DNA from: Monocercomonoides exilis PA203 | Lineage: Eukaryota; Protista; Preaxostyla | Reading direction: 5' to 3' | Length of the DNA: 64,000 nt | Assembly: GCA_001643675.2 (NCBI GenBank) | Contig: LSRY02000052.1 | Coordinates: 310,001 to 374,000, forward strand | Shown here: piece after piece, positions 17,701 through 22,386 of the stretch | How the letters are laid out: each line of letters begins with the position of its first letter | Position numbering within the stretch: position 1 is the stretch's first letter | Position numbers and translations under genes: made by a program | The notes under the pieces: model-generated | Told to the model about the DNA's origin: nothing | Databases searched by the model: none | Seen by the model: only the letters and a program-made list of their open reading frames with translations

Positions 17701-17887
17701 AAATTTGTATTACTTCATGAATAATGAAAAATTCTTTAAACTGGTTATATTTTCAATAAATTATAATGGTTATTTCTGTGAAAACAGCATAATGGAGACA
17801 TTGATCAGATTTTTAAATTAAATTGGTGTGAATAATTTATTTTCTTTGTTCAGAAAGCAATAAAAATTTCTTTACTTTAAATAGAAA

Positions 17888-18494
17888 ATGGCTGCAAAAA
17901 AGGAAAGAAATTTGGCAGATGAAATATTTTATTCTGAACGTGTACACGATGATTATTATGAATATCGGTATTATTTCTTTTTTGGAAGTGATTGTTTTAT
18001 TATAATTGATTTTATTGTTTAAATATACAATTTGTTAACGAAATACTGTTTAGTCATGTTATTCTACCAAAAGAACTTGCAGAAAAAGGTTAATAACTTT
18101 TTTTTGTTATTGATTAATATTTTTGCTTGATTTTAGTTCCTAAAGATCATTTTATGACAGAAGAGGAATGGAGGAGGCTTGGGATTTGTCAGTCAGTTGG
18201 GTATGATTTGTTTTAATATCTTATATTTCATTCTTCATTTTTTTTATATAGATGGGTTTGCCTGCTGTTTTTCGAGTGATAGTCCATTTTTTTATCATTT
18301 TTTTTATTGTTTCTTTTCTTTCTGGATTAATGTTTTACCGAACATTTTGATTTAACAACAGGGTATGAGGCTTTTATTTTTATAAAATTTAATTTATTAA
18401 CTTTTATTAACTTATCTCCAAAGAACATTTTGACATGCATCCCCCAGAACCTCACATCATTCTATTTCGAAGACCTCTTCCAAAGCCTAATTGA
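17888..18494 (+). CDS. CKS1: Cyclin-dependent kinase regulatory subunit Cks1/Suc1, 84 aa, 6 exons (17888-17967, 18054-18088, 18137-18200, 18252-18255, 18362, 18424-18494)
   Basis: Not in the ORF track. Spliced product: [84 protein letters not shown]. It has the Cks signatures YEYRHV.LP, EEEWR.LG..QS.GW and PEPHI.LFRRP. Exons total 255 nt and all introns are GT-AG. Confidence 0.95.
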
Positions 18495-19041
18495 TCTATT
18501 TTATTTTATGAATTCTTCCTACACATTTCACCCCTCTTTTGCAACATTTGATTGCTGCAAATGAGTTTTGCAAATTTTCATTGTTTAACTCTTAAAACTG
18601 AATAACTATATTCATTGATAAATCAACATTTATTTATGGTTGAATTTGAGACCATTAATGAAGCAAGAAATTATTACACTTGGATCATGTTCATCACTTA
18701 TTGTTTATTCAAAAAAGTATTTAAAAATTTCTACTATTATCACGTGAAAACAAAATTCCCTTTCAAAGGCGAAATAAAAAAAATTGTATAAAAAAAGCTT
18801 GACGTTATCTGATTTCCATGTTATAAAGCAAGACATAAAGACAAGCAAAAACTGGAATACTTAAGGCTTATTAATCTCAGAAAAGATTTTTGAATATTAA
18901 ACAATGATAACAAAACTAAAATGAAAATGAGATGATAATAAAAGCCGCTGATGAAATACAAAGAAAACCACAAAAATTATAATAGGAAGAAGTTATAATG
19001 AGATGAAGAATTAGAAAATGAAATGAGAACGACAATTAATT

Positions 19042-20631: not shown

Positions 20632-22386
20632 ATGGCAGAAGCAGCTGTATGAAAATAATATTGCATTAATTAATTAATTAATAATTTTCTTTTTGTCGCA
20701 TTTCAAATCGATTTATCTTTGAAAATGCTATTTTTCAATGTTCTGTCAGAGTATGCTTTTTTAATTGTTAAAAACAATGCAGATGCAAATTTGGATTCTT
20801 ATTAACAACCTTTCTATTTTACGTTTATATGTTATATGAATACGATATTATTTAGCTTCTGAATATTCCGCATCAGAAAGTTTAGAACAATTGATGAGAG
20901 AATCAACCATGCTCCTTGAAACAGGTTTATAATTTTCAATTATTGATGCACATTTACAACACTGACAATTTTATTAATTGTTAAATGTAAATCATGCTTT
21001 TAGGTCTTAAAGATACTCGCCAAAGTTCTTCAAGAGCCGCTCCAACTTCATCAAGCTATTTATCAACTCCCATGCAAACTGGCCCATTTCAGCAACCACA
21101 AACAGCATCTTCTATTCATTCTACTTCTGCATACAACCAGCCATTTCTATCTTCAACAAACCCTATTCCTCTTTCATCTACTGCACCTTCATCAAGCAGT
21201 TCAACTGTGATGTGCGATAGTTGTCCTCCTGAATCTCCAAATCCAGCTGTATATTTTTGCAGACAATGTAGAGGTTTGCATTTTATTAGCATTGGCATAT
21301 TCATAAAATTGCAATAATTTTATTTATACCAATTATCTTTCATTTTTGAAAGGAAACTTTTGTGAAAATTGCGATGCGCAGTTTCATCCATCTCATAATG
21401 CTTTGATGAGCAGACATGTCCGTTTGCCAATTGACTCGTCTCGTTCAGCATTGTTTTGTTCCGAACATCCAGAGGAAGAGCTTTCATACTATTGCTTGAG
21501 CTGCGAAGGCACATGCATTTGCTCTGAATGTGCAATTCGTGGAGCGCATAAAGGGCATGATGTACAGACAATTAGAAAGAGTTACGGTGAGGTACGAAAG
21601 CGTATGAACGAAATTGTATCCGCGTTAGCAATGAGGCAAGAGGCAGTCAAAAAGATTCTAATGCAGATTGAGGCACATGAGCAAGAAATTGCTGATAACA
21701 CACGATCCATAAAAGAGTCAATGGCACTTTCATTTAATGAGCTAAGAGAGAAGATAAGAAGAAAAGAGCTGGAGTTTATGGCTACAGCAGACAAGTTCCA
21801 AGAAGAGCAGATTGCAGAATTATCTTCATTCATATCATATGCACAGACAAAGCAAAATGAGATAACTGGAGCTATTTCTCAGATGAAAGGAGCTAGCGAA
21901 AGCTCAGATGAAATAGGGCTTCTCAACTTTTATGGAACGCATAAACAAGTTGCGACCGATCTTCTAAAAGACACACCAATTGATGTGAGGCTTCCAGAAG
22001 TTGCCAGCAGACGATGCTATTTGGATATGGAAAGTGCAAACAAGCAATTAGAGGGACTTTCAGCATTGCATTTGGCAGTGGCTTCAGTTCAGGCAACATA
22101 CACACAAGGAATAGAAGGAGCACCGGGAATGCTCCCAGGAGCAGAGACTGGAGCACCAATGTCGATGTCGCTTGGAGATGGAGAAAGCGGAACAGAAAGA
22201 GGAGCAATGAGAGCAACACCTTCATCCGCGAGGCAGATGGGGCAGTCTGCTCAAAGCGGTATGGATTCATACTATGGAGCCCCTGGAATGGAGAATTCGG
22301 GAATGGAAGGACGAGAGAGGATGAGTGGAAGGTCAAGCAGAAGAGACAGGGATGTTGAAGGAACAGGAAGAAAGAAGAGATTATGA
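20632..22386 (+). CDS. Tandem B-box zinc finger plus coiled-coil protein (TRIM-like, no RING); exons 20632-20646, 20750, 20856-20924, 21004-21273, 21353-22386
   Basis: B-box1 CDSC...FCRQCRGNFCENCDAQFH...H and B-box2 CSEH...YYCLSC...ICSECAIRGAHKGH, followed by a heptad-rich helix. The 5' exons are in frame only with a 1-nt exon. Confidence 0.88.

What the first reader, a model, noticed from the sequence alone, without database searches (positions are those of the whole stretch)
18181..18430. Cks1 requires a single-nucleotide exon (G at 18362) next to a 4-nt exon
Seen: exon 3 ends ...CAG TCA GTT GG|GTATGA (18200) and the last exon starts AAG|AA CAT TTT (18424). The conserved Cks motif QSxG-W-x-H needs exactly 5 nt between them (A TGG G). 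These are supplied by TAG|ATGG|GTTTG (18252-18255) and ACAG|G|GTATGA (18362), with canonical GT-AG introns of 51, 106 and 61 nt. The ~80 nt before 18361 contain no other AG. Omitting either micro-exon shifts the frame and destroys PEPHI.LFRRP, and I found no alternative canonical join. Established: 1-nt exons are very rarely documented (e.g. Arabidopsis APC11) and are missed by gene finders and aligners. Inference: the base is included by ordered, recursive-like splicing, because both splice sites cannot be occupied at once.
Basis: partly seen in the sequence, partly recalled or inferred. Interest (0 to 1): 0.92.

Follow-up and report, generated by a model that had tools for sequence, protein, structure and literature searches.

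The report
One-base exon in oxymonad Cks1
The cell-cycle gene Cks1 of the mitochondrion-less protist Monocercomonoides exilis is spliced from six coding pieces, one of 4 bases and one most likely a single G; three oxymonad genera share this layout, and every public gene model gets it wrong.

Summary
The window is Monocercomonoides exilis contig 50. The coordinates are exact: exon 3 ends at 18200, ATGG is 18252-18255, G is 18362, and the last exon starts at 18424.

Mature mRNA cannot say which G is used. A splice site shifted by one base (GT..AA or TT..AG) gives the same letters.

Comparison settles most of this. Six loci keep AG|G|GT at this place inside otherwise unalignable introns: both other M. 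exilis paralogues, Blattamonas nauphoetae, Streblomastix strix and a metagenome contig. In all five loci put through the enumeration it is the only canonical way to build the missing five bases. The shifted-site rivals would need intron ends that are not conserved.

All public models of these genes are truncated, frameshifted, padded or shortened here.

One-base exons are known in plant APC11 and VPS55 and in Fusarium CYP621A. This one would be the first in a protist and sits next to a 4-base exon. The order of splicing is untested. First-stage notes claim a second one-base exon in this window; I did not test it.

The parts
17826..17884 (+). probable 59-nt intron in the 5' UTR (GTGTGA..AATAG). 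The upstream UTR exon reaches at least 17806-17825.
   Evidence: Inference. RNA contigs of X1 and X2 carry 12 loose letters before 17877 that equal window 17806-17817. The piece 17877-17966 has one other letter, as expected if ..TTAAATTG (17818-17825) is joined to 17885. The joint was not listed by the tool.
17888..17967 (+). coding exon 1 (80 nt, ATG at 17888; mRNA exon starts about 17885)
   Evidence: Translation. RNA joint 17967/18054, GT..AG, in 3 runs.
17968..18053 (+). intron 1, 86 nt, GTATTA..TTTAG
18054..18088 (+). coding exon 2 (35 nt)
18089..18136 (+). intron 2, 48 nt, GTTAAT..TTTAG
   Evidence: RNA joint 18088/18137
18137..18200 (+). coding exon 3 (64 nt), ends ..CAG TCA GTT GG
   Evidence: Pfam CKS profile 26-50
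18201..18251 (+). intron 3, 51 nt, GTATGA..ATATAG, phase 2 in the Gly codon
   Evidence: conserved position in six loci
18252..18255 (+). 4-nt exon ATGG (third base of Gly plus the Trp codon)
   Evidence: The RNA contigs of four runs carry ATGG between 18200 and the last exon (table 5c). AG|NTGG|GT(GC) is kept in six loci, and S. strix has the synonymous CTGG.
18256..18361 (+). intron 4, 106 nt, GTTTGC..AACAG, phase 0; its last 77 nt are free of AG
   Evidence: A single intron at this phase-0 position exists in L069.
18362..18362 (+). 1-nt exon G (first base of the Glu codon GAA), in the context aacAG|G|GTATGA
   Evidence: The mRNA has one extra G. This is the only canonical solution. A-G-G-G-T-n-T are the only invariant columns in a 51-nt alignment of six loci. 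The source of the mRNA G is inferred, not directly shown.
18363..18423 (+). intron 5, 61 nt, GTATGA..CCAAAG, phase 1
   Evidence: A single intron at exactly this phase-1 position exists in L026.
18424..18494 (+). last coding exon (71 nt, ..[22 protein letters not shown], TGA at 18492-18494). The 3' UTR runs to about 18596-18617.
   Evidence: (contig ends at 18596, 18609, 18617)

Best explanation
This is the expressed Cks1 (CDK regulatory subunit) gene of Monocercomonoides exilis. Its coding sequence is split by five canonical short introns. Three of them fall within five coding bases (GG^A TGG^ G^AA). That leaves a constitutive 4-nt exon (ATGG, 18252-18255) and a constitutive 1-nt exon (G, 18362). 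Each intron is recognised on its own, by intron definition across 48-106 nt, through normal GT(A/T)TG donors and AG acceptors. The acceptor AG of intron 4 and the donor GT of intron 5 are separated by one base, so they cannot both be held by splicing factors at once. The two introns must therefore be removed one after the other. Either order regenerates a normal site: ATGGG|GTATGA after intron 4 goes, or AACAG|GAACAT after intron 5 goes.

Shown: the mature mRNA sequence; the uniqueness of the canonical solution; the conservation of the layout in three paralogues and three oxymonad genera.

Inferred: that the mRNA G comes from 18362; that splicing is sequential; that the layout arose because intron positions used singly in other eukaryotes are all filled in oxymonads.
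For: (1) RNA. In four runs one contig each joins 17967/18054 and 18088/18137 (three runs) and joins 18200 to the last exon with ATGG and one further G between. This is the in-frame mRNA.
(2) Pfam CKS positions 1-50 and 50-68 lie on the two sides of the gap.
(3) The other two M. exilis paralogues have the same exon sizes, 80/35/64/4/1/71(74), with AG|ATGG|GT and AG|G|GT, and give full 84-85 aa proteins.
(4) B. nauphoetae (L067), S. strix (L073) and metagenome contig L068 have the same trio and give full Cks proteins.
(5) Enumeration finds exactly one GT/GC..AG solution for ATGGG in each of the five loci tested.
(6) Introns are otherwise unalignable. The invariant columns around the site are A,G,G,G,T,-,T only. 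The chance of AGGGT per gap is 0.004-0.036.
(7) All nine donors flanking the micro-exons in M. exilis fit the local GTNTG consensus.
(8) The published analysis reports ubiquitous GT-AG and no U12 system in this genome (PMC6759080).
(9) The synonymous A-to-C change in the first base of the S. strix 4-nt exon behaves as coding sequence.
Against: The exon base is G in all six loci. The base after the ATGG donor cut and the last base of the final intron are also G. The mature mRNA is therefore equally produced by one 168-nt intron whose donor or acceptor is shifted by one base; the read aligner in fact reported the joint as GT..AA. No partly spliced intermediates were seen. The data were assembled contigs from one study, which drop rare forms. 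No DNA reads were laid, so an assembly indel was excluded only by comparing six loci from four assemblies. No mutational test exists.
Confidence: 0.88

Rival explanations
1. There is only one intron (167 nt) between ATGG and the last exon, and it is cut one base off a canonical site. Either the donor is shifted (ATGGG|TTTGCC..AAAG|, a TT..AG intron) or the acceptor is shifted (ATGG|GTTTGC..CCAAA|G, a GT..AA intron). The internal AGGGT would be irrelevant or a splicing enhancer.
For: It gives the identical mRNA. The aligner placed the extra G at 18423 and labelled the joint GT..AA. The exon base is G in all six loci, so no locus discriminates.
Against: Across the six loci the required intron ends would be TT/TA/TT/CA/TA/TT at the 5' end, or AA/AA/AA/AA/AA/CA at the 3' end (with a GC start in Blattamonas). 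No conserved non-canonical dinucleotide results, whereas GT(GC)..AG holds everywhere under the 1-nt-exon model. This rival leaves unexplained why AG-G-GT-n-T is the only invariant island in diverged introns (chance 0.4-3.6% per locus). It also leaves unexplained why the perfectly canonical ATGG|GT..AG|AACAT join, which frameshifts, is not the form seen in RNA. GT-AG is reported as ubiquitous in this genome.
Confidence: 0.07
2. The assembly lacks one G, either in ATGGG at 18252-18256 or at the acceptor 18423/18424. The true gene would then have a 5-nt exon ATGGG, or an AG|GAACAT acceptor, and no 1-nt exon.
For: The assembly is Nanopore-based (PMC8767320) and homopolymer deletions are a known error class.
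Against: The same count of G is found in three M. exilis paralogues, in the independent B. nauphoetae and S. strix assemblies and in a JGI metagenome contig. The assembly was polished with ten rounds of Pilon. RNA contigs match all exons with no gaps. The conserved AG|G|GT would be left unexplained.
Confidence: 0.02
3. The G is added at the RNA level, by editing-type insertion or polymerase stuttering on the G run, after a canonical ATGG|GT..AG|AACAT splice.
For: Only that the mRNA has one base more than the simplest canonical join.
Against: No such system is known in metamonads (own knowledge). All four RNA assemblies show the same single form. It does not explain the conserved internal AG|G|GT.
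Confidence: 0.01

Closest known systems
Arabidopsis / land-plant APC11 single-nucleotide exon (PMC4674806; PMC8831610)
   Same: A constitutive 1-nt exon flanked by AG and GT inside what annotation called one intron. It is needed for the reading frame of a small cell-cycle protein, is missed by genome annotation, and is conserved across a large clade. The authors also propose sequential (intron-definition plus recursive) removal.
   Different: The APC11 base is an A, so it cannot come from a shifted splice site, and base substitutions were shown to pass into the cDNA. Here the base is G and no mutational test exists. APC11 has no neighbouring 4-nt exon. Introns here are much shorter (48-106 nt).
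Plant VPS55 1-nt microexon (PMC8831610)
   Same: A conserved 1-nt exon with well-conserved flanking splice sites, missing from reference annotations.
   Different: In some plants it is alternatively included and changes the N-terminus. Here only the included form was seen, and it lies inside the conserved core of the protein.
Fusarium CYP621A one-nucleotide exon (PMC12940212)
   Same: The same kind of evidence: an AG|G|GT aligned in many orthologues, a frame requirement from a conserved motif, and RNA reads that show the mature join. The base is also a G within or beside a Gly codon context.
   Different: A fungal P450, with a single micro-exon. That paper calls itself the second example. The present case is in Metamonada, is present in three paralogues, and is paired with a 4-nt exon.
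Drosophila recursive splice sites (ratchet points, zero-nucleotide exons; PMC8605326, PMC6110457)
   Same: An acceptor and a donor lie next to each other, so that one splicing event regenerates the site for the next. Removal is stepwise.
   Different: Ratchet points are AG|GT with no base kept, lie in very long introns and leave no trace in the mRNA. Here one base is kept, the introns are about 50-100 nt, and the site is needed for the frame.
Fungal stwintrons (spliceosomal twin introns); from my own knowledge, not checked in a paper here
   Same: Two introns so close that they must be excised consecutively.
   Different: In a stwintron the inner intron interrupts a splice site of the outer one and nothing between them is retained. 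Here the two introns are separate and the spacer base is coding.
Constitutive 4-nt microexon of human MPC1 (PMC9929638, abstract only)
   Same: A constitutively included 4-nt exon whose length is not a multiple of three.
   Different: A vertebrate gene with long introns, studied under exon definition. Here the 4-nt exon sits between 51-nt and 106-nt introns and is followed by a 1-nt exon.

Membership tests
Single-nucleotide constitutive exon (APC11 / VPS55 / CYP621A kind) | The mature mRNA carries one base that is not contiguous with either flanking exon in the genome | tested here: met
   Four RNA contigs carry ATGG plus one G between 18200 and 18424. The canonical join without it frameshifts (searches show such models).
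Single-nucleotide constitutive exon (APC11 / VPS55 / CYP621A kind) | A genomic copy of that base is flanked directly by an acceptor AG and a donor GT, with introns of workable length on both sides | tested here: met
   aacAG|G|GTATGA at 18360-18367, with introns of 106 and 61 nt. It is the only canonical solution.
Single-nucleotide constitutive exon (APC11 / VPS55 / CYP621A kind) | AG|N|GT is conserved in orthologues and paralogues while the introns diverge | tested here: met
   Six loci in at least three named species; the invariant columns are A,G,G,G,T,-,T only.
Single-nucleotide constitutive exon (APC11 / VPS55 / CYP621A kind) | The identity of the base excludes an origin from a neighbouring splice-site base | tested here: not met
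   The base is G in all six loci, the same as the first intron base after ATGG and the last base of the final intron. Membership therefore rests on conservation, not on the mRNA alone.
Single-nucleotide constitutive exon (APC11 / VPS55 / CYP621A kind) | Changing or deleting the genomic base changes the mRNA accordingly | not testable with these tools
   Needs a minigene or genome edit, as was done for APC11.
CKS / Suc1 CDK regulatory subunit (Pfam PF01111) | Match to the whole CKS profile above the curated cut-off | tested here: met
   P0001 (exons 1-3 plus ATGG) scores 83.9 bits on profile 1-50. The last-exon frame scores 24.5 bits on profile 50-68. The joined protein was not sent to any search tool.
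Recursive splice site / ratchet point | Juxtaposed AG|GT with no retained base, inside a long intron | tested here: not met
   One base is retained, the introns are 61-106 nt, and there is no AGGT in the gap.
Recursive splice site / ratchet point | Stepwise removal shown by intermediates or lariats | not testable with these tools
   Only assembled contigs were available, and the read-laying cap is one call.
Non-canonical (GT-AA or TT-AG) intron | The same non-canonical terminal dinucleotides recur in orthologues | tested here: not met
   The required ends vary (TT, TA, CA at the 5' end; AA, CA at the 3' end) across the six loci.

The most novel reading that the evidence does not exclude
Oxymonad spliceosomes handle one-base exons routinely. 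On this reading the Cks1 case, conserved since before Monocercomonoides, Blattamonas and Streblomastix split and kept in three paralogues, is the visible tip of a lineage-wide class of 1-nt and few-nt exons that current annotations miss. First-stage notes already claim a second one, an A at 20750 in this window. The obligatorily ordered removal of three introns within five coding bases could then act as a kinetic checkpoint on production of a cell-cycle regulator.
Probability: 0.2. Interest if true: 0.85.

Novelty: new member of a known kind. Interest (0 to 1): 0.72.

Why it matters
One-base exons test the limits of splice-site recognition, because the acceptor and donor complexes cannot sit side by side on one nucleotide. 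Only three gene families with such exons are on record: plant APC11 and VPS55, and Fusarium CYP621A. This would be the first outside plants and fungi. It lies in a deep-branching, intron-rich metamonad, is coupled to a 4-nt exon, and has been kept through gene duplication and genus-level divergence.

It also has a practical side. The GenBank/RefSeq proteins for all three M. exilis copies, and those of B. nauphoetae and S. strix, lack or garble the conserved C-terminal strand (..HxPEPHIxLFRRP). Inventories of cell-cycle machinery in these model amitochondriate organisms therefore rest on broken models, and similar frame-breaking sites may hide elsewhere in these genomes.

Tried and rejected
- **Pseudogene or frameshifted gene.** Rejected: the RNA shows the in-frame form.
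- **Other in-frame single micro-exons with AG..GT/GC.** Listed. None gives Gly-Trp, and ATGGGTTT gives a stop.
- **Duplicated exon start.** The similarity between 18340-18350 (GAACATTTTGA) and the start of the last exon might be a remnant of a duplicated exon. It is partly shared by the C13 copy but not by C72, Blattamonas or Streblomastix. Left unexplained.
- **Branch-point motif scan**. The sequence is too AT-rich to be informative.
- **Metagenome scan** with an acceptor-plus-last-exon pattern. 58 of 59 loci were chance matches in unrelated frames. Some came from contigs labelled human-gut metagenome. I took none for human DNA, and only the match region was translated. One locus (L026) was a real Cks.
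- **The other two AGGGTNTG hits in the window** (21157 and 23614, minus strand) lie in coding-like sequence and are chance.
- **The look-up of encoding contigs for P0001** found nothing, because records of the window's own genome are withheld.
It held typed peptide letters. I did not resend them and read the stored protein file instead.
- **The joined spliced protein** was never sent to a search tool. Searches were made exon by exon by reference, or with public protein ids. The joined frame was only translated locally from stored files.
- **Not done.** Partly spliced intermediates and DNA reads could not be examined because both read tools are capped at one call. The second claimed 1-nt exon (A at 20750) was read but not tested. 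A downstream in-frame ATG offers a simpler reading there.

Full report
**What is there.**
- Exon 3 ends ..CAGTCAGTTGG at 18200 and is followed by GTATGA.
- ATGG (18252-18255) lies between tatatAG and GTTTGC.
- A single G (18362) lies between aacAG and GTATGA.
- The last exon starts at 18424 after ccaaAG.

With exon 1 (17888-17967) and exon 2 (18054-18088) the six pieces add up to 255 nt. They translate to an 84-aa protein with the full Cks signature (single exons). Pfam CKS positions 1-50 fall on exons 1-3 plus ATGG, and positions 50-68 fall on the last exon. Exactly five bases are therefore needed between 18200 and 18424. The spliced protein was only translated locally from the stored window.

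**Organism.** The window is contig 50 of an assembly of 82,301,135 bases in 101 contigs. These are the exact figures of the Nanopore assembly of Monocercomonoides exilis PA203 (PMC8767320). For this genome the authors report ubiquitous GT-AG introns, no U12 system and a mean intron length of about 120 nt (PMC6759080).

**RNA.** Four RNA runs of one study hold the mature transcript. Laid on 17750-18700, one contig per run covers the exons with no gaps. The contigs show the joints 17967/18054 and 18088/18137, both GT..AG. They also show a joint from 18200 to 18423 with the letters ATGG in between (tables 5, 5c, 8). This removes the pseudogene reading. It also shows that the canonical but frameshifting join ATGG|AACATT is not the form present.

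The aligner put the extra G at 18423 and called the joint GT..AA. Any GT..AG intron begins and ends with G. A donor cut one base late (ATGGG|TT..AG) or an acceptor cut one base early (GT..AA|G) therefore gives the same mRNA as a one-base exon that is a G. Mature mRNA cannot decide, so the decision has to come from comparison.

**Paralogues.** A six-frame search of the whole genome with the CKS profile finds two more copies, on contigs 72 and 13. Both have the same layout:
- ..GG|GTTTGC .. AG|ATGG|GT(A/T)TG .. AG|G|GT(A/T)TG .. AG|last exon.
- Exon sizes are 80/35/64/4/1/71 or 74.
- Intron sizes are 82-86, 48-51, 50-56, 96-106 and 48-61.
- The proteins are complete, at 84-85 aa.

**Other genera.** A protein search starting from the public model of this gene led to four more loci.

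| Locus | Source | Layout at the site | Product |
|---|---|---|---|
| L067 | Blattamonas nauphoetae (JARBJD, identified in PMC10703272) | ATGG with a GC donor; G in ttttAG\|G\|GTATTA | full protein |
| L073 | Streblomastix strix | 4-nt exon is CTGG, a synonymous change; G in tgcAG\|G\|GTGTGT | full protein if TAA is read as Gln |
| L068 | AT-rich JGI metagenome contig | ATGG; G in ataaAG\|G\|GTTTGA | full protein |

The upstream introns of L068 differ from those of M. exilis.

**Strength of the conservation.**
- Outside the splice sites the introns do not align.
- In a 51-nt alignment centred on the site, the only invariant columns in six loci are A, G, G, G, T and the T at donor position +4.
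- The 4-nt exon with its AG and GT/GC is likewise an island.
- AGGGT turns up in 0.4-3.6% of shuffles of each gap. Dinucleotide-preserving shuffles give 0.06-0.4% for AGGGTNTG.
- In the whole 64-kb window the 8-mer occurs three times on both strands, as chance predicts. The other two hits lie in coding-like sequence.
- An exhaustive enumeration of ways to build ATGGG from pieces flanked by AG and GT/GC gives exactly one solution in each of the five loci tested. That solution is the 4-nt exon plus the G.
- Under the shifted-site rivals the intron ends would be TT, TA or CA at the 5' side, or AA or CA at the 3' side. They are not conserved. Under the 1-nt-exon model every intron is GT(GC)..AG.
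- An assembly indel would have to recur in six loci from four independent assemblies.

I therefore put the 1-nt exon at 0.88.

**Public models.** Every public model fails here.

| Copy | Accession / id | Fault |
|---|---|---|
| M. exilis, this copy | KAH7816801.1 | reads from ATGG into intron 4 (..GWVCLLFFE*) |
| M. exilis, contig 72 | KAH7814928.1 | joins ATGG straight to the last exon and frameshifts |
| M. exilis, contig 13 | KAH7824504.1 | joins ATGG straight to the last exon and frameshifts |
| M. exilis, contig 72, older model | MONOS_11128 | pads the gap with a false exon that ends at the G\|GT donor |
| B. nauphoetae | P0002 | reads into intron 4 |
| S. strix | P0153 | drops W-E-H-F-D-R through a canonical in-frame join inside the last exon |

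**Origin (inference).** Cks genes of other, unidentified eukaryotes carry a single intron at one or another of these neighbouring places.
- Phase 0 right after TGG in L069.
- Phase 1 after TGG-G in the GC-rich L026.
- Phase 1 inside the Gly codon in L070 and L072.

In oxymonads the phase-0 and phase-1 positions after Trp are both filled, which isolates one base. A third intron lies in the Gly codon, at phase 2, and isolates ATGG. The layout predates the split of the three genera and the M. exilis duplications.

**Mechanism (inference).** The introns are short, so sites are paired across introns. The AG of intron 4 lies at positions -3 and -2 of the donor of intron 5. The factors that hold a 3' site and a 5' site cannot both be there at once, so removal must be sequential. 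Either order leaves a normal site for the second step. The authors of the APC11 paper came to the same view for their case. No intermediates were visible in the assembled contigs, so the order is unknown.

**Comparison with what is known.** One-base exons are documented for Arabidopsis and land-plant APC11, where base substitutions were shown to pass into the cDNA. They are also documented for plant VPS55 and for Fusarium CYP621A. The Fusarium case rests on the same kind of evidence as here and is described as the second example. Paper searches pairing oxymonad or Blattamonas terms with micro-exon terms, or Monocercomonoides with introns and splice, listed no paper that links the two. This is therefore a new member of a known, very small class, the first in a protist, with the added feature of a 4-nt exon directly upstream.

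**Limits.**
- There is one RNA study, and only assembled contigs.
- No DNA reads were laid.
- There is no mutational proof.
- The exon base is G everywhere.
- The first-stage notes on this window claim a second 1-nt exon (A at 20750). I only read the sequence and did not test it.

Noticed in passing
window 17806-17884: The Cks1 mRNA seems to have a further 59-nt GT..AG intron in its 5' UTR (17826-17884). RNA contigs carry 12 letters equal to 17806-17817 just before 17877, and there is one mismatch where ..TTAAATTG would meet AAAATGG.
   Followed up: partly
window 20633-20860: First-stage notes (s1-464191, s1-463960) claim a second 1-nt exon, an A at 20750 in tgtcAG|A|GTATGC, in the B-box gene. 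The sequence is as described. However, an in-frame ATG further down (..CAATTGATGAGAGAA..) would allow a simple model with a 5' UTR intron instead. No RNA check was possible.
   Followed up: partly
window 18340-18350 versus 18423-18433: GAACATTTTGA occurs inside intron 4, 12 nt before the AG of the 1-nt exon, and again as the last intron base plus the start of the last exon. The contig-13 copy has GAACCTTTT at the same place; the other loci do not. It may be a remnant of a duplication, a branch-site region, or chance.
   Followed up: partly
L067:1837-1919 (Blattamonas nauphoetae): The intron after the 4-nt exon starts with GC (GCATGC), a GC-AG intron, in an otherwise identical layout.
   Followed up: no
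L073:1510-1512 and 1795-1797 (Streblomastix strix): There are in-frame TAA codons at positions where the other oxymonads have Gln (..CQS..). This fits the TAA/TAG=Gln code of this organism.
   Followed up: partly
L026 (minus strand 1100-1230), L069:680-750, L070:1350-1630, L072:255-345: Cks genes of unidentified other eukaryotes carry a single intron at one of several places within six bases around the Gly-Trp codons: phase 1 after TGG-G, phase 0 after TGG, and phase 1 in the Gly codon. This looks like a hot spot of intron positions.
   Followed up: partly
window 18289-18322: In all four RNA runs an unrelated contig (363-510 nt, opposite strand, 3 mismatches) matches this T-rich stretch of intron 4. 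It runs on into unlike sequence on both sides, so it is a low-complexity match and not intron retention.
   Followed up: no
G000 contigs 72 and 13 (L001, L003): M. exilis has three Cks1 paralogues. The contig-50 and contig-13 proteins are nearly identical, while contig 72 differs (..QQSQGWVNFDRHAPEPH..). Whether all three are expressed was not checked.
   Followed up: no
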